From the IMG/VR virus record IMGVR_UViG_3300030085_002431, positions 186,001 through 250,000 of that record: 64,000 bases of DNA; one strand, 5' to 3'. Positions 28,679 to 49,588 of this stretch are shown piece by piece. A program made the position numbers and the translations under genes. The notes beneath the pieces were generated by a model, which saw only the letters and a list, made by a program, of their open reading frames with translations, did no database searches and was not told the DNA's origin. Numbering within the stretch: the first letter of the stretch is position 1; each line of letters begins with the position of its first letter.

Positions 28679-28926
28679 ATCCAACTAAACCACTAACACC
28701 CGAAGAAGTTGCAGATGCAGCAGAACAATTCTTTCCTCTGTTTGATATTGTGCATCGTCAAATGCCAGAAAATTCAAACGTTGAAGATACTTTGAAAGTT
28801 ATGGAGTCTGTTTGTGGTCTTGCTCATAAACTGAGAATGCAGTCTGATAACGATAAGGCAGGTCCGTTTGGTTTTAATAAAAAGGTAGAAACCGATGAAG
28901 ATTCTTCATCTAACGAAGAAACCTGA
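28675..28926 (+). CDS. Hypothetical protein
   Basis: ATGA overlap; EDTLKVMESV...GPFGF. Confidence 0.6.
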   Translation: MNPTKPLTPEEVADAAEQFFPLFDIVHRQMPENSNVEDTLKVMESVCGLAHKLRMQSDNDKAGPFGFNKKVETDEDSSSNEET

Positions 28927-29476
28927 TTCCTATGATTTCAGAGAATACATCTATGTATGGGATAATTTCCTATCAGATGAATTCTCTGATTTTTTGGATG
29001 AAGAGATTTATATGCATACCAACTGGAGATACTGTAACTGCGTAGATACTCCAGAATGTTCTCATACAATATGGGGTAGAACTTATAAAGATTGGAGACC
29101 AGAGTATATAAATGACCTAACTGAAGTTCTTGAAAGTAAAACTGGTATTCTAATTCCATCTCCAGAATACGTTGGATTGAATGGGCAAACAATGGGAATG
29201 AATGCTTGTTTACATCAAGACTGTGCTTCATTAGAAGCAAACAAAACAGCATCATTTCTTTATTACATTGGTACAGATGATGCAGATGGAGACTTAATCA
29301 TTTACAATAATGAGAGAGAACCTATTGAAAGAATTGAGTTTGTAAAAAACAGAATGGTTCTTTTTGATGGAAGCATTCCACACTCTGCTGATGGACCAAC
29401 GAGTATGACATTACGAATGTCATTAGTGTATAGAGGTTACTATGAAAACAATAACGGGAATGCGAGTAGTAGGTAG
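28895..29476 (+). CDS. 2OG-Fe(II) oxygenase
   Basis: WDNFL; HQD...F..NR.VLFDG.IPH....P.....R.S. Confidence 0.8.
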   Translation: MKILHLTKKPDSYDFREYIYVWDNFLSDEFSDFLDEEIYMHTNWRYCNCVDTPECSHTIWGRTYKDWRPEYINDLTEVLESKTGILIPSPEYVGLNGQTMGMNACLHQDCASLEANKTASFLYYIGTDDADGDLIIYNNEREPIERIEFVKNRMVLFDGSIPHSADGPTSMTLRMSLVYRGYYENNNGNASSR

Positions 29477-29869: not shown

Positions 29870-30375
29870 CAGACTGGTTAGAACTATACGAAGCACTTCC
29901 AGGTGAAGAACTAGATAAAATTGCAGTTCTTCGGGTTATGGAATGTACCAACGGTATTATTCAGTATGCACACCGAGATGATGCTGATTATAAACTTTCC
30001 ATTGAAGAAACCCGAAAGGCAATGAACTTCAGTATGGGAAGCATCAAGAGGATGACAATCGAACTCACTGATGAAACCATTACCTTTGAACCTGAGACAG
30101 AAATTCTGATGCGTAAAGCACGGGAACTCTACATCAGTGGTGCTAAGAAAGGAAATGATGAGGACTACTCTGAGTTTCTGGCAATCTCTGCTGCTACAGC
30201 AAGAGCATGTGGTTTGGAGAGACTTGTGCAAGCTGTTAAGACTCTCAAAGAAAAGCAGACCGAAATCCCCTCTCGGTGTATAGTATGGGGACTAGAATAC
30301 CTTCTTCAATTTTTTGACGATGAACATATTCGTGACTTCTTCGGATCCAAAGGACTCAGCGACTTATCTTCCTGA
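29866..30375 (+). CDS. Hypothetical protein
   Basis: 169 aa; ATGA overlap. Confidence 0.6.
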   Translation: MTDWLELYEALPGEELDKIAVLRVMECTNGIIQYAHRDDADYKLSIEETRKAMNFSMGSIKRMTIELTDETITFEPETEILMRKARELYISGAKKGNDEDYSEFLAISAATARACGLERLVQAVKTLKEKQTEIPSRCIVWGLEYLLQFFDDEHIRDFFGSKGLSDLSS

Positions 30376-30835
30376 CAAACATATTGTCAAGATGCCGTTG
30401 GAGTGTTGCCAAATGCTTGCGGTCATTGCGTCGGACAGGTGGGGGCATGGGTACGGCACCCTCCCTAAGGCAGACGGAACCCCCTACAGGACCGAGAAGG
30501 GGGCATTCAGGAACCATCCCTGCACTGCCTGGGCACGGGACACCGTGGACAATGCCTGGTGGATGCTGATGTGGGGTCTGCACCTCTGCGATGAGTACAA
30601 GCATAGATATAACAAGACTCACTCTTGTTACAATACTTTACTTCATGCTCAAAATATCTTCCCAAATGGTAATATAACTAAAGTAACTCCCTTTGCACGG
30701 GCAATGCCTGATGAATATAAATTTGACTCAAGCATTGATACTTTTACTGCTTACAAGAATTACATTAGCAGCAAACCTTGGGTTGCATCTAATTATCTTC
30801 GTGACCCATCCAGAAAACCAGATTGGGTAAATTAA
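30320..30835 (+). CDS. Pyrimidine-dimer DNA glycosylase (DenV)-like family protein
   Basis: MNIF...DKHIVKMPLE..QML...NHPC..W...LC.EY..RY.K.H...AMPDEYK. Confidence 0.7.
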   Translation: MNIFVTSSDPKDSATYLPDKHIVKMPLECCQMLAVIASDRWGHGYGTLPKADGTPYRTEKGAFRNHPCTAWARDTVDNAWWMLMWGLHLCDEYKHRYNKTHSCYNTLLHAQNIFPNGNITKVTPFARAMPDEYKFDSSIDTFTAYKNYISSKPWVASNYLRDPSRKPDWVN

Positions 30836-31080
30836 TGCGTAACTTAATACGAGAGTTCTTTAAACCATCAGAGGATAAAATTTTGGCAAATCAGAATGCT
30901 TTTTACCTTGCAGACAAGGTAATTGAACTTCAAGAACAAGTTGCATTATTAAAAGAGGAGAATTCTTCATTGCGAGAAGAATTGTCAGAAGTTGAACGCA
31001 AACTTAACGCCATACAACCTGTGGTGTATAATATAACAAGTAGAGAGGACCTCTCAAATTATACCTTAGGAGACAAATGA
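30835..31080 (+). CDS. Coiled-coil hypothetical protein
   Basis: TAATG overlap; heptad pattern. Confidence 0.5.
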   Translation: MRNLIREFFKPSEDKILANQNAFYLADKVIELQEQVALLKEENSSLREELSEVERKLNAIQPVVYNITSREDLSNYTLGDK

Positions 31081-31733
31081 AAATCTTTTTAGATACTGCC
31101 GATGTTGACCTGATTCAGGAGGCATACTCCACAGGTCTAATCAATGGTGTTACCACCAACCCTACAATCATCAAAAGAAGTGGCAGAGACTTCGTTGAAG
31201 TAATTAAAGAGATTCAGAGTAAGTTTCCTAACCTTGAATCTATTTCTGCTGAAGTAGTTGCTGATACTGCTGAAGAAATGATTGACCAGGCAAACCAATT
31301 CCAAGGAATGTGGAATGTTACAATCAAAGTTCCTTGCACTGTTGAAGGTCTGAAGGCATGTACTGCACTTGCAGTAAATGGATACAAAGTTAATGTAACT
31401 CTTGTATTCTCTGTTGCTCAGGCAATTCTTGCAGAGAAAGCAGGTGCTACTTATATCTCACCTTTTGTTGGTCGTTGGGAAGATAATTCTGTAGATGGTC
31501 TTGGTCTAATCAAGAACATCCGTGAAGTTTACACTGGTGATAACCGATTCACCACAACTCAAATCCTTGGTGCATCTGTTCGTGATGTTCGTCAAGTTGA
31601 GCAGTGTGCTCTGTTTGGTGCAGATGTTGTGACTATTCCACCTCTTGTCTTCTGGTCCATGTATAAGAATGTAATGACTGAAAAGGGTCTGGCAACATTC
31701 CAAAAGGATTGGGAAGACGCAAATGGAATCTGA
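31077..31733 (+). CDS. talC: Transaldolase (TalC/FSA type), auxiliary metabolic gene
   Basis: IFLDTA, GVTTNPT, IKVP, NVTLVFS, YISPFVGR, ASVR motifs. Confidence 0.95.
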   Translation: MKIFLDTADVDLIQEAYSTGLINGVTTNPTIIKRSGRDFVEVIKEIQSKFPNLESISAEVVADTAEEMIDQANQFQGMWNVTIKVPCTVEGLKACTALAVNGYKVNVTLVFSVAQAILAEKAGATYISPFVGRWEDNSVDGLGLIKNIREVYTGDNRFTTTQILGASVRDVRQVEQCALFGADVVTIPPLVFWSMYKNVMTEKGLATFQKDWEDANGI

Positions 31734-40397: not shown

Positions 40398-40976
40398 ATG
40401 AATTTTGAAATAATAAATGAAGACCTTTATTCGGTCACAGATTGTTTATCTTCGACCGATTTTTCATTGATTGATGATGAATTCAATTGTAGATATAATA
40501 ATTGGTTATTTACCAAAAAAGAAACTGATAGACCAGATTGGTATCCTTTAAGGGGATTTTTAGAAAAGAATGATACTGAGGATTGGAATCTAGGATATAA
40601 TTTTCAATTAATTAGAGTAGGAACAACAATAAAATTACATTGTGAGCATTTGTTGAAAAAAAAGTTGCTCTTTAAAAGAGTGCATACAAACATACAATTT
40701 TTTGGACAAGAATCTACATTTCATCAAGACACTGAAGAAAGAGAAAGTGGTAAAGATTGGTCTTTTTTAATTTTTGTTGATACTCATTGGAATACTGAAC
40801 ATGGTGGTGATTTTATTTGTATGTTAGAAAATGGTAAGTACAAAAATATTCCATTTATTCCTAATAACGGTGCTTTATTTAATTCTGTATTGGAACATAG
40901 AGGTGCTGCACCAAATGCACTTTGTTTACACAAACCAAGAAAAACTGTACAATTCTTATTTAATGAAATAGATTAA
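40398..40976 (+). CDS. 2OG-Fe(II) oxygenase
   Basis: FHQD...W....GG...PN.G.LF.S..EH.G..P. Confidence 0.8.
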   Translation: MNFEIINEDLYSVTDCLSSTDFSLIDDEFNCRYNNWLFTKKETDRPDWYPLRGFLEKNDTEDWNLGYNFQLIRVGTTIKLHCEHLLKKKLLFKRVHTNIQFFGQESTFHQDTEERESGKDWSFLIFVDTHWNTEHGGDFICMLENGKYKNIPFIPNNGALFNSVLEHRGAAPNALCLHKPRKTVQFLFNEID

Positions 40977-40983
40977 TTTTGTT

Positions 40984-41580
40984 ATGGATTTTATTTTAGA
41001 AACTTACATTAAAGATATTTCTATCTGTGACCGTTTAGTTGACTTTTTCAATAATTCAGAGTATTCTAGATTAAGAAAGAGACCAGGGACTACAAGTGGT
41101 GGAATTACTCCTACACAAAAAGAGTCTACGGATCTTTCAATTTTTCCTCAAGAATTTAGTGAACCAGAATTAAGTCCAATTGGTGATTACATCCCACAAT
41201 TATTTGGTTGTGTAGATGAATATGTTGCAAAATATGCATGGTGTAACGCATCTACAGCTCAATTTGGAATCCTAGAAAGAATTAATATTCAGTTCTACAA
41301 ACCTGGAGAGGCATTTCATGGATGGCATTTTGAACGTGGTAGTTCTGATTTCCCTGCTTGCGGAAGACATCTAGTTTGGATGACATATTTGAACGATGTT
41401 GATGATGGTGGTGGTACAGAATTCTTTTATCAAGAAAAAGTAACCACTGCAAGAAAAGGAAAAACTGTTATTTGGCCAGCAGATTGGACACATACACATA
41501 AAGGTGAAGTTTCCAACACTGAGCACAAATATATAATTACTGGTTGGTTAAATTACGACCTTACTTCTATAAAGATGTAA
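40984..41580 (+). CDS. 2OG-Fe(II) oxygenase
   Basis: WHFE...R.LVWMTYLNDV..GG.TEF...WPA.WTH.HKG...KYIITGW. Confidence 0.88.
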   Translation: MDFILETYIKDISICDRLVDFFNNSEYSRLRKRPGTTSGGITPTQKESTDLSIFPQEFSEPELSPIGDYIPQLFGCVDEYVAKYAWCNASTAQFGILERINIQFYKPGEAFHGWHFERGSSDFPACGRHLVWMTYLNDVDDGGGTEFFYQEKVTTARKGKTVIWPADWTHTHKGEVSNTEHKYIITGWLNYDLTSIKM

Positions 41581-43017: not shown

Positions 43018-43209
43018 ATGAAATTCTCTGAATATACATTTGGGGGTCGTCCTATTACTCCCATAAATCTTCTTCTTCTCATTAGTGAAATGGAAGGTAC
43101 TTACCAACATCTCAAATATATGGGATTTGAGGAAGATATGAATATTATTGATGAAATGAAGAAAAAGTACTATAAAATGTACTTCAAACTTAATAAAAAA
43201 GAAAAATGA
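43018..43209 (+). CDS. Hypothetical protein
   Basis: LISEMEG.YQHLKYMGF.EDM. Confidence 0.6.
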   Translation: MKFSEYTFGGRPITPINLLLLISEMEGTYQHLKYMGFEEDMNIIDEMKKKYYKMYFKLNKKEK

Positions 43210-43757
43210 TTAATAGGTGTTTTCCCAAAGATTTTTATATTAAGTTTGAAATTCCAAACTATGATGAACTTCTAGAATTTTGTGAAAAGAAAACTGAAGT
43301 AAACAATGAAAAGTTTACTTGGGGTGCTGATTGCAACCTGGATAGAGTTCCACTTAATGCTGAAGAGACTTCTTCTATTATTGGACCGTCTGTTCAACAA
43401 TTTGCTAAAATTCTAGGAAAAGACTTTGGATGTTATTCATCAGACCCTTGGATAAATCACTATACAAGAGGTTCTTATCAAGAGGTTCATTCTCATTCAG
43501 AAAATGATTTTGCTTCAGTATTTCTGTTGAATGATGGAGAAGAGTTTTCTCAGTTTTACTTCTATAATGAAGTGTCAATGGCAGAATCTAGATGGAGTCA
43601 TGCTGTTCCTGAGATTGCTAATAGCCAAATATATCCTATCTTAACAGAAGGTGAAGTAATTTTCTTTCCTGGTTGGTTACAACATGGTGTTACACCACAT
43701 AAAAGTGATATTGTAAGAAAAACTCTTGCATGTAATTATAATTTTGCATTTAACTAG
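43206..43757 (+). CDS. 2OG-Fe(II) oxygenase (TIGR02466-like)
   Basis: WIN.Y..G.YQE.HSH...EG..IFFP.WL.HGV.PH...RKT. Confidence 0.85.
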   Translation: MINRCFPKDFYIKFEIPNYDELLEFCEKKTEVNNEKFTWGADCNLDRVPLNAEETSSIIGPSVQQFAKILGKDFGCYSSDPWINHYTRGSYQEVHSHSENDFASVFLLNDGEEFSQFYFYNEVSMAESRWSHAVPEIANSQIYPILTEGEVIFFPGWLQHGVTPHKSDIVRKTLACNYNFAFN

Positions 43758-43830
43758 GGGGGTTTAGCTCAGTTGGTAGAGCACCTGCTTTGCAAGCAGG
43801 AAGTCAGGGGTTCGAGTCCCCTAACCTCCA
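43758..43830 (+). tRNA. tRNA-Ala(UGC)
   Basis: GGGGGTT/AACCTCC with G3:U70; loop TTTGCAA. Confidence 0.93.
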
Positions 43831-43846
43831 TGTAAAGAACAGAACT

Positions 43847-44302
43847 ATGAAAATAGAAGTAGAAGGTTCTCCTGTTCTCAGAAAGAAATCAAAAAGAGTT
43901 TCAAATATAAACAACGATATCCGAAAGTTTTGTGCTGAGATGGCACAGACAATGAGAGATGCAAAGGGTATTGGAATTTCAGCACCCCAGGTGGGGGTAT
44001 CTAAACGCATCATAATTGTTAATGATGGAGGAAATGATTGGGTATTGATTAACCCAGAAATTATTTGGGATGATGGTAAAAGAGTTTCTTTTAATGAGGG
44101 TTGTTTAAGTGTTCCTGGTGAATATGCAGATATTCTCAGACCAGACAGGATTAGGGTGAAATATAGAGAACTATCTGGGAGACCTCAGACTGTAGACTTA
44201 GACGGTTTATTGTCAAGGATAGTGCAACATGAAATTGACCACTTAAATGGCATTCTTTTCACAGATTACTTGACTGATAGAGGAAGTGCGATTACTATAT
44301 AA
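43847..44302 (+). CDS. def: Peptide deformylase
   Basis: GIGISAPQVG, EGCLS, QHEIDHLNG; short C-terminus. Confidence 0.95.
   Translation: MKIEVEGSPVLRKKSKRVSNINNDIRKFCAEMAQTMRDAKGIGISAPQVGVSKRIIIVNDGGNDWVLINPEIIWDDGKRVSFNEGCLSVPGEYADILRPDRIRVKYRELSGRPQTVDLDGLLSRIVQHEIDHLNGILFTDYLTDRGSAITI
44270..44298 (+). promoter_or_regulatory. sigma70-type promoter for tmRNA (inside def 3' end)
   Basis: TTGACT-17-TACTAT. Confidence 0.7.
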
Positions 44303-44304
44303 AG

Positions 44305-44545
44305 TGTTCAAGAGGTTGCGAAGTCTGTTGTTTTGGACAGGGGTTCGATTCCCCTCACCTCCATTCATGGGGGTGCCATGGTTTCGACAGGGCAAAAAGG
44401 TCGTAATTGTTGACGGGACATAAACATAGATGCAAACACATCTGAAACCGCAGCAAATAACATTGTTGCATTCTCCCGCAGCACCGTTGCTGCCTGAATG
44501 GGGGATGGGGGATAAGTCTTCCTTCTAATCCAATAGACTCTTGGG
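44305..44545 (+). ncRNA. ssrA: Circularly permuted (two-piece) tmRNA, cyanobacterial type
   Basis: T arm GGGGTTCGATTCCCC plus CACCTCCA (to 44363) precedes the 5' piece GGGGGTG..GGTTTCGAC (from 44369); G3:U70; tag ORF 44453-44497 ANNIVAFSRSTVAA*. Confidence 0.9.
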
Positions 44546-44565
44546 GGTGAGATGCCCCTCTTTTT
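44543..44565 (+). terminator. Intrinsic terminator after tmRNA
   Basis: GGGGGT-gaga-TGCCCCT followed by CTTTTT. Confidence 0.7.
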
Positions 44566-44606
44566 GTATAAATACTCCAGAGTTAATTAAACTTAGGATA
44601 CTTTTT

Positions 44607-44774
44607 ATGAAATCTTTAGTCGCAAAGGGTGCATCCAACGTAGCACCATTCGCAGCAGCATCTGCGGTCGCAATCTTTAGTGCCATTATTGGATTTGGTT
44701 TCTATCATGGGGCATTCCACATGAATGGAAACAGCACCCATTGCCATGCAGAAGGAGTATGCCATAACCACTGA
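44607..44774 (+). CDS. Small membrane protein with His/Cys-rich C-terminus
   Basis: TATAAATA at 44567; one TM helix; ends HCHAEGVCHNH. Confidence 0.55.
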   Translation: MKSLVAKGASNVAPFAAASAVAIFSAIIGFGFYHGAFHMNGNSTHCHAEGVCHNH

Positions 44775-44895
44775 TTATGAGTAAAACTATTATTATTGCC
44801 TTGATTGCATCTGCTGTCAGTATTACTACCTGGGAATGGATGCACATTGTTTATGGAGTTGATGAACTACCACAACAAACTATAGGAGTAAAGAA

Positions 44896-45111
44896 ATGAG
44901 CAGATTTAGAGACCTATTTGAAGGTGCAGCACCAGCACCACCAGAAGTTTTTGATGCACCTGCTGAATCAGCAGAACTAACCCCACCTCCAGCACCTGGA
45001 ACCATTAAAGAAGAGGTATTTGGGGAAGCAGCAGCACCTCCAGCAGTAGAGGTAACTGAACCAGAAGCAGCACCAGAAGCAACACCAGAACCAAGAACAT
45101 TTGGTATGTGA
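44896..45111 (+). CDS. Pro/Ala/Glu-rich small protein
   Basis: SD aggag; MSRFRDL. Confidence 0.55.
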   Translation: MSRFRDLFEGAAPAPPEVFDAPAESAELTPPPAPGTIKEEVFGEAAAPPAVEVTEPEAAPEATPEPRTFGM

Positions 45112-45411: not shown

Positions 45412-45792
45412 ATGGCAACTCGTTCACGCATCGGTATTCAAATTGGTAACGATATTCTTTCTGCTTATCATCATTGGGATGGTTATCCTGAGTGGTTGGG
45501 TCGGATTCTCAAGACACACTACAATACGAAGGAGAAAGTAGCAGAACTCATTGACGGTGGTGATATGTCTGTTGCTTGGGGTGATGACAACAAACCTGAG
45601 TATTATGCTGACCGTGGTGAGGATTGTCCTCCTTCTTATATGTCTATGGATGAGTATCTCACCAAAGATAATAATGAAGAATATGCGTACATGTTCACTA
45701 GTGCTGGATGGGTTTGCTATAATATGAATGAGTTTGACGACTCAAAGCAACCTGAATTGGTTGAAATCTCTGATGTTCCTCTTGCTGCTTAA
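45412..45792 (+). CDS. Conserved phage hypothetical protein
   Basis: MATRSRIG...Y.HWDGYP...G..L..HY...ELIDGGDMS. Confidence 0.75.
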   Translation: MATRSRIGIQIGNDILSAYHHWDGYPEWLGRILKTHYNTKEKVAELIDGGDMSVAWGDDNKPEYYADRGEDCPPSYMSMDEYLTKDNNEEYAYMFTSAGWVCYNMNEFDDSKQPELVEISDVPLAA

Positions 45793-46397
45793 TGTTTGGA
45801 TGGAAAGTTGATAGTAATACGCAAAGATTTTCGGTATTTCCTACCTTAATCTATGTCATTGATATTCCTGAGGTTGTGGAAGACCTCGGGGATATTCTTT
45901 CTGCTGTAAAGTGGAGGATGCCAGATGATGATAGGAGTGGTTCGGAATCTTTCTTTGTTCTGGATGAACATCAGCACCTGAAGGATTTATTTACTGAGAG
46001 AGTAAATACTGCGGTGTCTGAATTGCAATATACTGTTCCATTAAAACTTACAACAAGTTGGTTTTTTAGGTTAAAACCTGGAGCAAAACATCCTAAACAT
46101 AAACATACCAATTCTTTTTGGAGTGCAAGTTTTTACTTTGAAAAAGGTGAAAGAGAAGCACTAAATATATCCGCACCTGCCCATGCTATCAATGTTCCAG
46201 TGAACACACAAGATATGGGGATAGTTCCATATGGAAGATTATCTTTCCCTGCGGAATGTGGTAAACTAATTTTGTTTCCCAGTCATATGGAACACTGGGT
46301 AAATGAAAACACCTTCAATAAAACTAGACACGTTCTGGCAATGAATTTCATGCCAGATGGAGAAACTGGTTTCCTAGATTCAACTTTCACCTATTAA
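45792..46397 (+). CDS. 2OG-Fe(II) oxygenase (TIGR02466-like)
   Basis: SW....PG..H..H.H.NS..S..FY...G.LILFPS...H.V..N.....R. Confidence 0.85.
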   Translation: MFGWKVDSNTQRFSVFPTLIYVIDIPEVVEDLGDILSAVKWRMPDDDRSGSESFFVLDEHQHLKDLFTERVNTAVSELQYTVPLKLTTSWFFRLKPGAKHPKHKHTNSFWSASFYFEKGEREALNISAPAHAINVPVNTQDMGIVPYGRLSFPAECGKLILFPSHMEHWVNENTFNKTRHVLAMNFMPDGETGFLDSTFTY

Positions 46398-48481: not shown

Positions 48482-49084
48482 ATGCTTAATAGACCTGTTG
48501 TAATTAAAAGAGTATTAAAACCTGATTTTTTTTATGATGTGAATAAAACGATTCACCATCACATGAGATGGGCAATCAATAATTATTCAGAAGGTCCAGG
48601 TGATAGTGCCAATGACCCAGTTTCCTGGGGAGTAGTACATAAAAATTGTGAACCAATAATATATAAGGCAGCAACTATAATTAAACTTAAAATTTTACGT
48701 CATATCAGACAAAAAATTCAAATATGTAAGATACACTATAATGCTCAGACTTCTGGGCAAGCATCAAAATTCCATCACGACTTTGACCAAGAACTTTGTT
48801 GGACATTTGTTTTATTTACAGAAAAACATTGGGATACACAATGGGGTGGTGAGTTTGTTTGTCAGCATCCACTAAGTAAAGAATATTTTCATACCCCATA
48901 TATTCCAAATAGTGGTGTGTTGATACCTTCAAGTTGGCAACATTATGGACAATCTCCTTCCGCAATAACTGACAAGGTAAGAACTACACTTGCAATTTGT
49001 TATATGGAAGCAGAAACTTTAGAAGATGAACTTGAACACTATAAATCTAAAGGAGAAATTGATACTCTTCACGAGTTCGTGTAA
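48482..49084 (+). CDS. 2OG-Fe(II) oxygenase
   Basis: FHHD...W...WGGEF...PN.GVL.PS.W.H.G..P.....R. Confidence 0.8.
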   Translation: MLNRPVVIKRVLKPDFFYDVNKTIHHHMRWAINNYSEGPGDSANDPVSWGVVHKNCEPIIYKAATIIKLKILRHIRQKIQICKIHYNAQTSGQASKFHHDFDQELCWTFVLFTEKHWDTQWGGEFVCQHPLSKEYFHTPYIPNSGVLIPSSWQHYGQSPSAITDKVRTTLAICYMEAETLEDELEHYKSKGEIDTLHEFV

Positions 49085-49090
49085 ATACTT

Positions 49091-49588
49091 ATGACGGTAT
49101 CAAAAACTCCTATGGAATATCTTCGGATACAACCTGGAAGAACGGTTCTAGTTCTTAATGCAACTTACGAACCAATAAATTTAACGGACTGGAAAAGAGC
49201 AGTTGTGTTACTCATGAAAGAGAAAGCACAACTGCTTTCTAATACTGTAATAAGACTTGTCAATTATATTAAACTACCATATAGTCTGATGATGAATCAT
49301 AAACCATCAAGGTCTATGATTTACAAACGTGATGGAAATAAGTGCCAATACTGTGGTTCAACAAAAGAACTTAGTATTGACCATGTTCATCCAAGAAGTA
49401 AGGGGGGAAGAGATACTTGGGAAAATCTAGTAACAGCATGTACAAAATGCAATATCAAAAAAGGTAATAAATTATTAGAGGAGTCTGGAATGGTTTTAGT
49501 TAGAAAACCTAGGGCACCATTAAATAAGATTGAATTATCTTTGAACAAATCAAAAAACTCTGAGTGGACACAGTATTTTTATGCCTAA
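49091..49588 (+). CDS. HNH endonuclease (McrA-like)
   Basis: LVLNA.YEP; RD...CQYCG....IDHV.P.SKGG...WENLV.AC..CN.KKG. Confidence 0.92.
   Translation: MTVSKTPMEYLRIQPGRTVLVLNATYEPINLTDWKRAVVLLMKEKAQLLSNTVIRLVNYIKLPYSLMMNHKPSRSMIYKRDGNKCQYCGSTKELSIDHVHPRSKGGRDTWENLVTACTKCNIKKGNKLLEESGMVLVRKPRAPLNKIELSLNKSKNSEWTQYFYA

What the first reader, a model, noticed from the sequence alone, without database searches (positions are those of the whole stretch)
44270..44565. Phage-encoded circularly permuted (two-piece) tmRNA with its own proteolysis tag
Seen: a T arm and acceptor 3' strand (..GGGGTTCGATTCCCCTCACCTCCA, ending 44363) come before the 5' strand GGGGGTG (44369), separated by only TTCAT. The acceptor stem has the Ala identity pair G3:U70. 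CAGGGCAA can pair with TTGTTTTG (P2). The tag frame 44453-44497 reads ANNIVAFSRSTVAA-stop; resumption one codon earlier is possible. It has its own TTGACT-17-TACTAT promoter and a terminator. Established: marine picocyanobacteria use permuted two-piece tmRNAs with ANNIV/ANKIV-type tags ending in AA. Inference: the phage captured a host-type ssrA to keep ribosome rescue working during infection, or to alter degradation targeting. Standard annotation would miss it, and no smpB is present in the window.
Basis: partly seen in the sequence, partly recalled or inferred. Interest (0 to 1): 0.85.

Follow-up and report, generated by a model that had tools for sequence, protein, structure and literature searches.

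The report
Cyanophage-encoded two-piece tmRNA gene
An uncultured marine T4-like cyanophage carries a real, structurally intact copy of the split "two-piece" ribosome-rescue RNA (tmRNA) of its cyanobacterial hosts; such genes have already been listed in a few related phages, so this is a well-supported new member of a known but little-studied class.

Summary
ARAGORN calls a permuted tmRNA at 44274-44588, and Rfam cyano_tmRNA scores 133.6 bits (gathering score 70; E 4e-36). No smpB is in the window. The gene is about 92% identical to unannotated segments of phages S-CAM1 and S-CAM3, and Buchholz et al. 2022 (Table S1) already list permuted tmRNAs in those phages. The phage copies fall on one side of a long branch apart from 116 host copies, with 13 compensatory base pairs and a covarying pseudoknot, so this is an old, selected phage lineage and not a recent capture. 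Metatranscriptome contigs cover only the coding piece and end within 2 nt of the predicted RNase P site. The tag is uncertain: marine cyanomyovirus copies carry an in-frame 21-nt insert that forms a conserved hairpin, and the canonical resume context precedes codon 44432. The most likely function is ribosome rescue with host SmpB during infection. In some relatives a tRNA-Tyr gene sits inside the tmRNA's intervening sequence.

The parts
43847..44302 (+). Peptide deformylase gene directly upstream; its last codons overlap the tmRNA promoter-like site
   Evidence: Pfam PF01327, E 7.8e-47. The PDF-tmRNA adjacency also occurs in the divergent relative L009, whose PDF is 62% identical.
44270..44298 (+). 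Sigma-70-like promoter site, TTGACT-17-TACTAT
   Evidence: Consensus scan. The two hexamers are conserved while the spacer varies in S-CAM1, S-CAM3 and L018. Other family members lack it and instead follow a tRNA directly. No transcription start was mapped.
44305..44363 (+). Acceptor piece: P2 5' strands 44314-44335, T-arm 44339-44355, acceptor 3' strand CACCTCC 44356-44362, discriminator A 44363. The 5' end is inferred from the -10 position; CCA is not encoded.
   Evidence: Rfam alignment. Covarying pairs in P2, the T-stem and the acceptor stem.
44364..44368 (+). Intervening sequence TTCAT, removed on maturation
   Evidence: It is 5-6 nt in phage copies, 5-30 nt in the hosts sampled by a pattern that allowed 2-30 nt, and holds a whole tRNA-Tyr gene in L147, L156 and L159.
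44369..44560 (+). Coding piece: acceptor 5' strand GGGGGTG 44369-75, D-loop analogue 44376-88, P2 3' strands 44388-44408, PK1 region 44409-26, tag region, downstream pseudoknot, 3' hairpin
   Evidence: Rfam. Metatranscriptome contigs X15 and X16 lie on 44369-44544, with no RNA contig on 43832-44359.
44427..44444 (+). Hairpin HP-a (UAGAUG-CAAACA-CAUCUG), partly formed by the phage-specific 21-nt insert 44432-44452; it contains candidate resume codon GCA 44432
   Evidence: 6/6 pairs in 17/17 unique sequences; a double compensatory swap in AG-345-P14. The insert is absent from hosts, L011/L014, S-CRM01 and S-CBWM1.
44432..44497 (+). Longest candidate tag frame, ANTSETAANNIVAFSRSTVAA-stop. Stop TGA at 44495-97.
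   Evidence: ARAGORN and translation. A at -4 and the 5-nt spacing from PK1 are conserved only for 44432. The Rfam alignment and hairpin homology favour 44453.
44450..44469 (+). Hairpin HP-b (GCAGCAA-AUAACA-UUGUUGC) across the ANNIVA codons
   Evidence: 7/7 pairs in 17/17 unique sequences, with compensatory changes A-U to U-A and G-C to A-U.
44472..44540 (+). Helix enclosing the tag's 3' part (UCUCCC pairing with GGGGGA after the stop) and the downstream pseudoknot (stem GGGGGA/UCCUUC; loop AGUCU 44515-19 pairing with AGACU 44535-39)
   Evidence: fold_alignment. The pseudoknot pairing is kept at 5 bp or more in 16/16 unique sequences through 8 sequence combinations.
44543..44567 (+). 3' terminal hairpin GGGGGTG-AGA-TGCCCC(T) plus T-run; the last helix of the Rfam model, which also resembles an intrinsic terminator

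Best explanation
This is a functional phage-encoded two-piece tmRNA of the picocyanobacterial type, carried by an uncultured T4-like cyanomyovirus with a roughly 250-kb genome. Proposed mechanism: the gene is transcribed from its own sigma-70-like promoter. Host RNase P cuts 5' of G44369. The 5-nt trailer after A44363 is trimmed and CCA is added by host enzymes. The two pieces stay joined through the acceptor stem and P2. Host AlaRS charges the RNA through G3:U70, and host SmpB and EF-Tu deliver it to ribosomes stalled on broken mRNAs. Translation then resumes on the tag frame, most likely at 44432, otherwise at 44450 or 44453, and ends at TGA 44495. The likely benefit is to keep ribosomes recycling while host transcription and RNA pools collapse, as part of a translation-support module with a tRNA array and peptide deformylase. 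Shown here: sequence and structure membership, purifying selection on structure, a separate phage clade, presence as RNA in the sea, and absence of smpB. Inferred: processing enzymes, charging, SmpB use, tagging, and the fitness benefit.
For: ARAGORN and two Rfam models call it. G3:U70, discriminator A and a host-identical T-loop and D-loop analogue are invariant. There are 13 pairs with compensatory double changes among 16 unique phage copies. The pseudoknot covaries, as do hairpins HP-a and HP-b. The 25 phage copies fall on one side of a long branch against 116 host copies. Homologues occur in at least 33 IMG/VR contigs and in isolates S-CAM1, S-CAM3, Sf-FS3, S-SSM7, S-SSM6a and AG-345-P14. 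RNA contigs cover only the coding piece, end within 2 nt of G1, and give zero depth on the adjacent PDF gene. The gene sits among 10 tRNA genes and next to PDF. No smpB is found in the window or in any cyanophage record, so a host partner is required.
Against: There is no direct evidence of aminoacylation, SmpB binding or tagging. The RNA evidence comes from assembled contigs, not reads; strain variation at 44368 could also end a contig there, and the tool warns that gaps in coverage prove nothing. PK1 is not convincingly foldable in the window's own sequence. Many sister copies have tags that do not end in AA (...LATA...LVTA), so the proteolysis half of the function may be relaxed or changed. 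Only about 20 of the roughly 314 cyanophage records matched carry a homologue, so it is dispensable for the group.
Confidence: 0.75

Rival explanations
1. Tag reprogramming: rescue still works, but the selected novelty is a phage-specific tag (a 7-residue N-terminal extension, a shortened or altered C-terminus) that changes which protease or adaptor sees tagged proteins. This could spare tagged proteins or route them to faster amino-acid recycling. It can hold alongside the best explanation.
For: Host tags are uniform 16-mers, ANKIVSFSRQTAPVAA or ANNIVRFSRQAAPVAA. Phage tags differ in length and ending...SRSTVAA...SRTRELATA...ELVTA...AVAV. The 21-nt insert is in frame in all 17 unique sequences.
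Against: The insert is constrained as an RNA hairpin with compensatory changes that alter the encoded residues (TS to TD), so selection acts on the RNA and not clearly on the peptide. The window's own tag still ends in VAA like the host's. Whether the insert is translated is unknown.
Confidence: 0.3
2. SmpB decoy: the RNA titrates host SmpB and blocks host trans-translation, as proposed for the TLD-only RNA of mycobacteriophage DS6A.
For: No phage smpB. The tRNA-like domain is identical to the host's at the D-loop analogue and T-loop, where SmpB is expected to bind. Hudson et al. 2014 (PMC4131195) describe the DS6A precedent.
Against: A decoy would not need an open tag frame, a conserved resume context, tag hairpins or a covarying downstream pseudoknot, yet all of these are maintained across the family.
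Confidence: 0.07
3. Passenger or relic: a host ssrA picked up by chance, an attP-type integration remnant, or host contamination of the assembly, with no function for the phage.
For: tmRNA genes are common integration sites and fragments occur in prophages (Buchholz et al. 2022). The flanks of the gene differ between phage genomes.
Against: The gene is full length, not a 3' fragment. The same lineage occurs in several cultured lytic cyanomyoviruses and in dozens of viral contigs with phage flanks. It is separated from all sampled hosts by a long branch. Compensatory changes show continued selection. It is present as RNA.
Confidence: 0.03

Closest known systems
tmRNA genes of Synechococcus phages S-CAM1 and S-CAM3 (listed as 'Permuted' in Table S1 of Buchholz et al. 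2022, PMC9004378)
   Same: About 92% identical over 44300-44565. Same T-stem, acceptor stem, 5-nt spacer, 21-nt insert...AANNIVAFSRSTVAA tag and promoter hexamers.
   Different: Different genomic neighbourhood: there the gene sits between small hypothetical genes and tRNA-Arg/tRNA-Val, here between PDF and a 55-aa ORF. Insert codons differ (SETA against SDSA). Those records do not annotate the gene.
Chromosomal two-piece tmRNA of marine picocyanobacteria (Rfam RF01851 cyano_tmRNA; Prochlorococcus, Synechococcus, Cyanobium)
   Same: Permuted order, G3:U70, identical T-loop and D-loop analogue, P2, the ANNIV...SR...VAA tag core, the helix around the tag end, the downstream pseudoknot and the 3' hairpin.
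   Different: T-stem GGGG/CCCC against GCGG/CCGC. Acceptor pair 5:68 G:C against C:G or U:A. No 5' hairpin, which is replaced by a promoter. A 21-nt insert forming hairpin HP-a. The tag's C-terminal part is 2 residues shorter. A long separating branch. It is encoded by a virus that has no smpB.
Alpha-type two-piece tmRNA of OM43 phage Melnitz and pelagimyophages (Buchholz et al. 2022)
   Same: A permuted tmRNA in a marine T4-like myophage with no integrase. The same functional speculation applies: maintain the hijacked translation machinery or tag proteins.
   Different: Melnitz's is of the alphaproteobacterial type and carries a glutamine riboswitch. The window's is cyano-type, and no riboswitch reaches Rfam's gathering score anywhere in the window.
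One-piece tmRNAs of mycobacteriophages (Bxz1 group) and Bacillus phage G; TLD-only RNA of phage DS6A (Hudson et al. 2014, PMC4131195)
   Same: Phage-borne ssrA homologues that rely on host SmpB.
   Different: Those have standard, non-permuted gene order. DS6A lacks a tag frame, whereas the window's gene keeps one.

Membership tests
Cyano-type permuted (two-piece) tmRNA (Rfam RF01851 / RF04321) | Covariance-model score above the curated threshold | tested here: met
   RF01851: 133.6 bits against gathering score 70, full model 1-288. RF04321: 91.1 bits against 47.
Cyano-type permuted (two-piece) tmRNA (Rfam RF01851 / RF04321) | Circularly permuted order: T-arm and acceptor 3' strand upstream of the acceptor 5' strand | tested here: met
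   CACCTCC-A ends at 44363, spacer TTCAT, GGGGGTG from 44369. ARAGORN flags it tmRNA*.
Cyano-type permuted (two-piece) tmRNA (Rfam RF01851 / RF04321) | Alanine identity: G3:U70 in a 7-bp acceptor stem, discriminator A | tested here: met
   The G:U pair is invariant in 16/16 unique phage copies. Neighbouring pairs covary (5:68, 6:67).
Cyano-type permuted (two-piece) tmRNA (Rfam RF01851 / RF04321) | P2 helix joining the two pieces | tested here: met
   TTGTTTTG/CAGGGCAA and the outer P2 strands, with several compensatory pairs.
Cyano-type permuted (two-piece) tmRNA (Rfam RF01851 / RF04321) | Tag reading frame that starts with an Ala codon and ends at a stop, with a hydrophobic ...AA end | tested here: met
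   The frame is open from 44432, 44450 or 44453 to TGA 44495-97 and ends ...STVAA. Which Ala codon is used is unresolved.
Cyano-type permuted (two-piece) tmRNA (Rfam RF01851 / RF04321) | Pseudoknots flanking the tag | tested here: inconclusive
   The downstream pseudoknot is well supported by covariation. PK1 upstream of the tag is plausible by eye in subtype-B relatives but not convincingly formed in the window's own sequence (reading).
Cyano-type permuted (two-piece) tmRNA (Rfam RF01851 / RF04321) | Maturation into two RNA pieces with CCA added | tested here: inconclusive
   RNA contigs span only 44369-44544, end within 2 nt of G1, and none lies on the acceptor piece or spacer. These are contigs, not reads, and CCA addition cannot be seen.
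Cyano-type permuted (two-piece) tmRNA (Rfam RF01851 / RF04321) | Works with SmpB in trans-translation | not testable with these tools
   No smpB in the window or in any cyanophage record. Use of host SmpB is inferred.
Phage-encoded tmRNA (class catalogued by Hudson 2014 and Buchholz 2022) | The gene lies in a bona fide phage genome, not a host fragment | tested here: met
   The window matches cyanomyovirus genomes throughout at under 80% identity. Flanks are PDF, 2OG oxygenases and a tRNA array. An identical locus sits in a 250,613-bp IMG/VR contig.
attP-type ssrA fragment of temperate phages or genomic islands | Only the 3' part of ssrA is present, serving as a recombination site | tested here: not met
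   The full-length gene matches model positions 1-288. The phage copies fall on one side of a long branch apart from the host genes.
TLD-only minimal tmRNA (phage DS6A type) | No tag reading frame | tested here: not met
   The tag frame and downstream domains are present and conserved.

The most novel reading that the evidence does not exclude
Marine cyanomyoviruses maintain their own long-diverged tmRNA lineage. In it, a 21-nt duplication-like insert has created an extra conserved hairpin at the resume site and a tag extended by 7 residues (21-31 aa in total). Many lineages have also replaced the C-terminal AA degron (...LATA, ...LVTA). Under this reading the phage separates ribosome rescue from host-type proteolytic targeting, or redirects it. 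In some genomes the gene has also become a processing cassette with a tRNA-Tyr nested in its intervening sequence.
Probability: 0.3. Interest if true: 0.7.

Novelty: new member of a known kind. Interest (0 to 1): 0.5.

Why it matters
Picocyanobacteria are major ocean primary producers, and their myoviruses are known for carrying host-derived genes that keep the infected cell working. A virus-maintained ribosome-rescue RNA, sitting with tRNAs and peptide deformylase, extends that idea to translation quality control. Because S-CAM1 and S-CAM3 are cultured and carry a copy about 92% identical, the open questions can be tested directly: whether it is processed in two pieces, which resume codon is used, what the altered tags do, and whether it affects burst size. 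There are practical points too. Several GenBank and RefSeq cyanophage records annotate this locus as a hypothetical protein or not at all. The phage-specific signatures (T-stem, pair 5:68, 21-nt insert) could also be used to tell viral from host tmRNA reads in metatranscriptomes.

Tried and rejected
1. I first read the third-position variation around the tag start (GCA/GCT, GCG/GCA, ATC/ATT, GTT/GTA) as evidence of coding. fold_alignment showed these are paired compensatory changes in hairpin HP-b, so they say nothing about translation of the insert.
2. A two-molecule MFE cofold of the predicted pieces did not give the canonical tmRNA fold. It is uninformative, since pseudoknotted tmRNAs are rarely recovered by MFE.
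3. In one search I gave wrong minus-strand coordinates for L009. That row is meaningless, and the alignment was redone.
4. Supplements of the 2025 tmRNA database paper held no phage listing. Four cyanophage papers that mention tmRNA do so only in reference lists or to report none found.
5. Host loci (8 kb around ssrA) contained no smpB, so they could not serve as a positive control. The whole-phage-collection search served as the control instead.
6. The Rfam model's 5' hairpin is aligned onto the promoter region of the window with poor pairs. Relatives that follow a tRNA do have that hairpin, so I treat it as absent here.
7. A glutamine riboswitch, reported next to some marine phage tmRNAs, was not found at Rfam's gathering score anywhere in the window.

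Full report
**Observation**

- The T-arm and acceptor 3' strand (...GGGGTTCGATTCCCCTCACCTCC-A) end at 44363.
- Five bases (TTCAT) follow, and GGGGGTG begins at 44369.
- The two strands form a 7-bp acceptor stem with G3:U70 and discriminator A. CCA is not encoded.

ARAGORN calls a permuted tmRNA at 44274-44588. Rfam's cyano_tmRNA model matches end to end at 133.6 bits (gathering score 70, E 4e-36), and the general tmRNA_permuted model scores 91.1 bits. A TTGACT-17-TACTAT site lies at 44270-44298 and a hairpin plus T-run at 44543-44567.

**Genome and neighbourhood**

- The window is 38% GC. It matches many T4-like cyanomyoviruses, but only patchily and below 80% identity.
- An identical locus lies in a 250,613-bp IMG/VR contig (L013), so the source is an uncultured large cyanomyovirus.
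- The sequence is present in many marine metagenome runs.
- The gene directly upstream is a peptide deformylase (Pfam E 8e-47). Its stop codon lies just past the -10 hexamer.
- The window holds ten tRNA genes, most of them within 3 kb upstream, and several 2OG-Fe(II) oxygenase paralogues.
- A PDF, tmRNA, 55-aa ORF arrangement recurs in a relative whose PDF is only 62% identical (L009).
- No SmpB-like frame exists in the window (best E about 0.7).
- The same E. coli SmpB query finds phage-borne SmpB down to about 34% identity in 68 phage records, and none of them is a cyanophage. A host SmpB must therefore be the partner. This is inference.

**Is it known?**

Only the tmRNA segment, not its flanks, is about 92% identical to phages S-CAM1 and S-CAM3. 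There it is unannotated or overlaid by a "hypothetical protein".

Weaker homologues that still pass Rfam's threshold occur in AG-345-P14, Sf-FS3, S-SSM7, S-CRM01 and S-CBWM1; S-SSM6a gave the same BLAST match as S-SSM7 but was not scanned with Rfam.

Buchholz et al. 2022 (PMC9004378) surveyed 18,146 phage genomes with ARAGORN and found 53 two-piece tmRNAs, 50 of them from marine or aquatic phages. Their Table S1 lists S-CAM1, S-CAM3, S-CBWM1, S-SSM6a and AG-345-P14 as "Permuted".

Earlier inventories knew only mycobacteriophage and Bacillus phage G examples (PMC4131195). I found no paper that analyses the cyanophage copies further. The class is therefore catalogued but uncharacterised, and the window adds a new member.

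**Evidence that it is a maintained, working gene**

Pattern scans brought in at least 33 viral contigs with the same family and 120 picocyanobacterial loci.

The viral copies share signatures that the hosts lack:
- T-stem GGGG/CCCC, sometimes GGAG/CUCC, against GCGG/CCGC in hosts.
- Acceptor pair 5:68 G:C against C:G or U:A in hosts.
- A 5-6 nt intervening sequence.

A consensus fold of 16 unique phage copies gives 57 pairs. Thirteen of them have compensatory double changes, spread over P2, the T-stem, the acceptor stem, a hairpin within the tag and the pseudoknot stem.

The loop-to-downstream pairing of the pseudoknot after the tag is kept at 5 bp or more in all 16 copies through eight different sequence combinations.

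In a maximum-likelihood tree, the 25 insert-bearing phage copies fall on one side of a long branch (SH-aLRT 93) against all 116 host copies. This is an old phage lineage under selection for tmRNA structure. It is not a recent capture, a relic or a contaminant.

**RNA evidence**

Four marine metatranscriptome runs hold part of the stretch. When they were laid on 43700-45000:
- Two runs from one sample each give a 178-nt contig on 44369-44544, with one mismatch and depths of 22.9 and 4.7. The contig ends within 2 nt of the predicted RNase P site.
- Other runs give shorter contigs inside the coding piece.
- No RNA contig lies on the PDF gene, the promoter, the acceptor piece or the spacer.

The silent PDF gene argues against DNA carry-over. 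The pattern fits a stable, processed coding piece.

Caveats:
- These are assembled contigs, not reads.
- Strain variation at 44368 could also break a contig there.
- The tool warns that gaps in coverage prove nothing.

**The tag**

Hosts have uniform 16-residue tags, ANKIVSFSRQTAPVAA or ANNIVRFSRQAAPVAA.

The marine cyanomyovirus copies carry an extra 21 nt (44432-44452) between the PK1 region and the ANNIV codons. This insert is absent from hosts, from a second viral type (L011/L014), and from S-CRM01 and S-CBWM1.

The insert helps form a hairpin, HP-a (44427-44444). HP-a is fully paired in all 17 unique sequences, and AG-345-P14 shows two adjacent compensatory swaps (UAUCUG/CAGAUA against UAGAUG/CAUCUG). 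A second hairpin, HP-b (44450-44469), is likewise fully paired and covaries.

Three Ala codons could be the resume codon.

In favour of 44432 (ARAGORN's choice, 21-residue tag ANTSETAANNIVAFSRSTVAA):
- The upstream context AUAGAU, with A at -4, is conserved in every phage and host copy.
- The 5-nt spacing from the PK1 region matches the hosts.
- The insert is always exactly 21 nt and in frame.
- From my own knowledge of E. coli tmRNA, A86 at -4 and nearby upstream bases set the frame.

- The Rfam alignment places the resume codon there.
- HP-b is homologous to the resume hairpin of L011/L014.

I put about 60% on 44432. Because compensatory changes in HP-a alter the encoded residues, selection on the insert acts at the RNA level.

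The C-terminal ends also vary among phage copies...STVAA here, but ...RELATA...ELVTA and ...AVAV elsewhere. This suggests that degron constraints are relaxed or changed in some lineages.

**Expression architecture**

In the window, S-CAM1, S-CAM3 and L018, the two promoter hexamers are conserved while the spacer varies. In other members the gene follows a tRNA directly and keeps the 5' hairpin of the Rfam model, so it is presumably co-transcribed and released by tRNA processing.

In L147, L156 and L159 a complete tRNA-Tyr gene sits inside the intervening sequence. In those genomes, cutting out the tRNA would also free both tmRNA pieces.

**Mechanism and rivals**

Best explanation (confidence 0.75): a working two-piece tmRNA that depends on host RNase P, 3' trimming, CCA addition, AlaRS, SmpB and EF-Tu. 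It sustains ribosome rescue during infection, alongside phage tRNAs and PDF.

Rivals:
- Tag reprogramming (0.3). This can hold alongside the best explanation.
- An SmpB decoy (0.07). A decoy would not need the conserved tag frame, resume context and pseudoknot.
- A passenger or relic (0.03). The clade structure, the covariation and the RNA evidence argue against it.

**Verdict**

The finding is real and well supported. I rate it a new member of a known kind, of moderate interest. The testable details that appear unreported in the papers I could search are the insert hairpin, the variant tags and the nested tRNA.

Noticed in passing
L147:13505-13863 (IMGVR_UViG_3300007956_000001); also L156, L159 and the 5'-truncated L157: A complete tRNA-Tyr(GTA) gene is nested in the intervening sequence of the permuted tmRNA gene, between ...CACCTCCA and GGGGGTG.... 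ARAGORN calls both genes and Rfam still scores the tmRNA at 112 bits. I found no report of a tRNA inside a tmRNA intervening sequence.
   Followed up: partly
L161 (AG-345-P14), L162 (Sf-FS3), L163 (S-SSM7), L005/L015/L018, L011/L014, L164 (S-CRM01), L165 (S-CBWM1): Many cyanophage tmRNA tags do not end in the usual Ala-Ala: ...RELATA, ...RQLATA, ...DELVTA, ...TAVAV, ...AVSCA, ...LVAAL. S-SSM7's candidate tag is 31 residues long. The proteolysis signal may be altered or relaxed in phage lineages.
   Followed up: partly
L002:3997-4137 (S-CAM3 gp053), L163:1486-1704 (S-SSM7 SSSM7_025), KU686192-KU686199: Public cyanophage records annotate short 'hypothetical protein' genes on top of the tmRNA locus, or leave it blank. 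These look like misannotations of an RNA gene.
   Followed up: partly
window:43847-44302: A phage peptide deformylase lies immediately upstream. Its 3' end overlaps the tmRNA promoter-like site, and the adjacency is kept in L009 despite only 62% PDF identity. This may be a translation-support module together with the tRNA array.
   Followed up: partly
window:44607-44774: A small conserved ORF (55 aa) lies just downstream. It has a hydrophobic N-terminal half and a Cys/His-rich end (HCHAEGVCHNH). It also follows the tmRNA in L009, L147 and L149 (76-87% identity). It has no Pfam match. One metatranscriptome contig (X18, 44594-44808) covers it.
   Followed up: partly
window:12084-48467: The 64-kb window holds ten tRNA genes (Thr, Ile, Leu x2, Ser, Val, Pro, Asn, Ala, Arg), seven of them between 41588 and 43830. 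An HNH endonuclease gene (49091-49588) lies near tRNA-Arg.
   Followed up: no
window:20006-20611, 28895-29476, 40398-40976, 40984-41580, 43206-43757, 45792-46397, 48482-49084: At least seven 2OG-Fe(II) oxygenase-family paralogues are scattered through the window, some weak and below Pfam's threshold. Transaldolase (31077-31733) and a pyrimidine-dimer glycosylase (30320-30835) are also present.
   Followed up: no
L074 (CALRJS020000007.1, labelled Sphingobacterium thalpophilum MAG): A contig filed under a Bacteroidota MAG carries a picocyanobacterial tmRNA that groups with Synechococcus UW140-type sequences in the tree. It is probably a mis-binned cyanobacterial contig.
   Followed up: no
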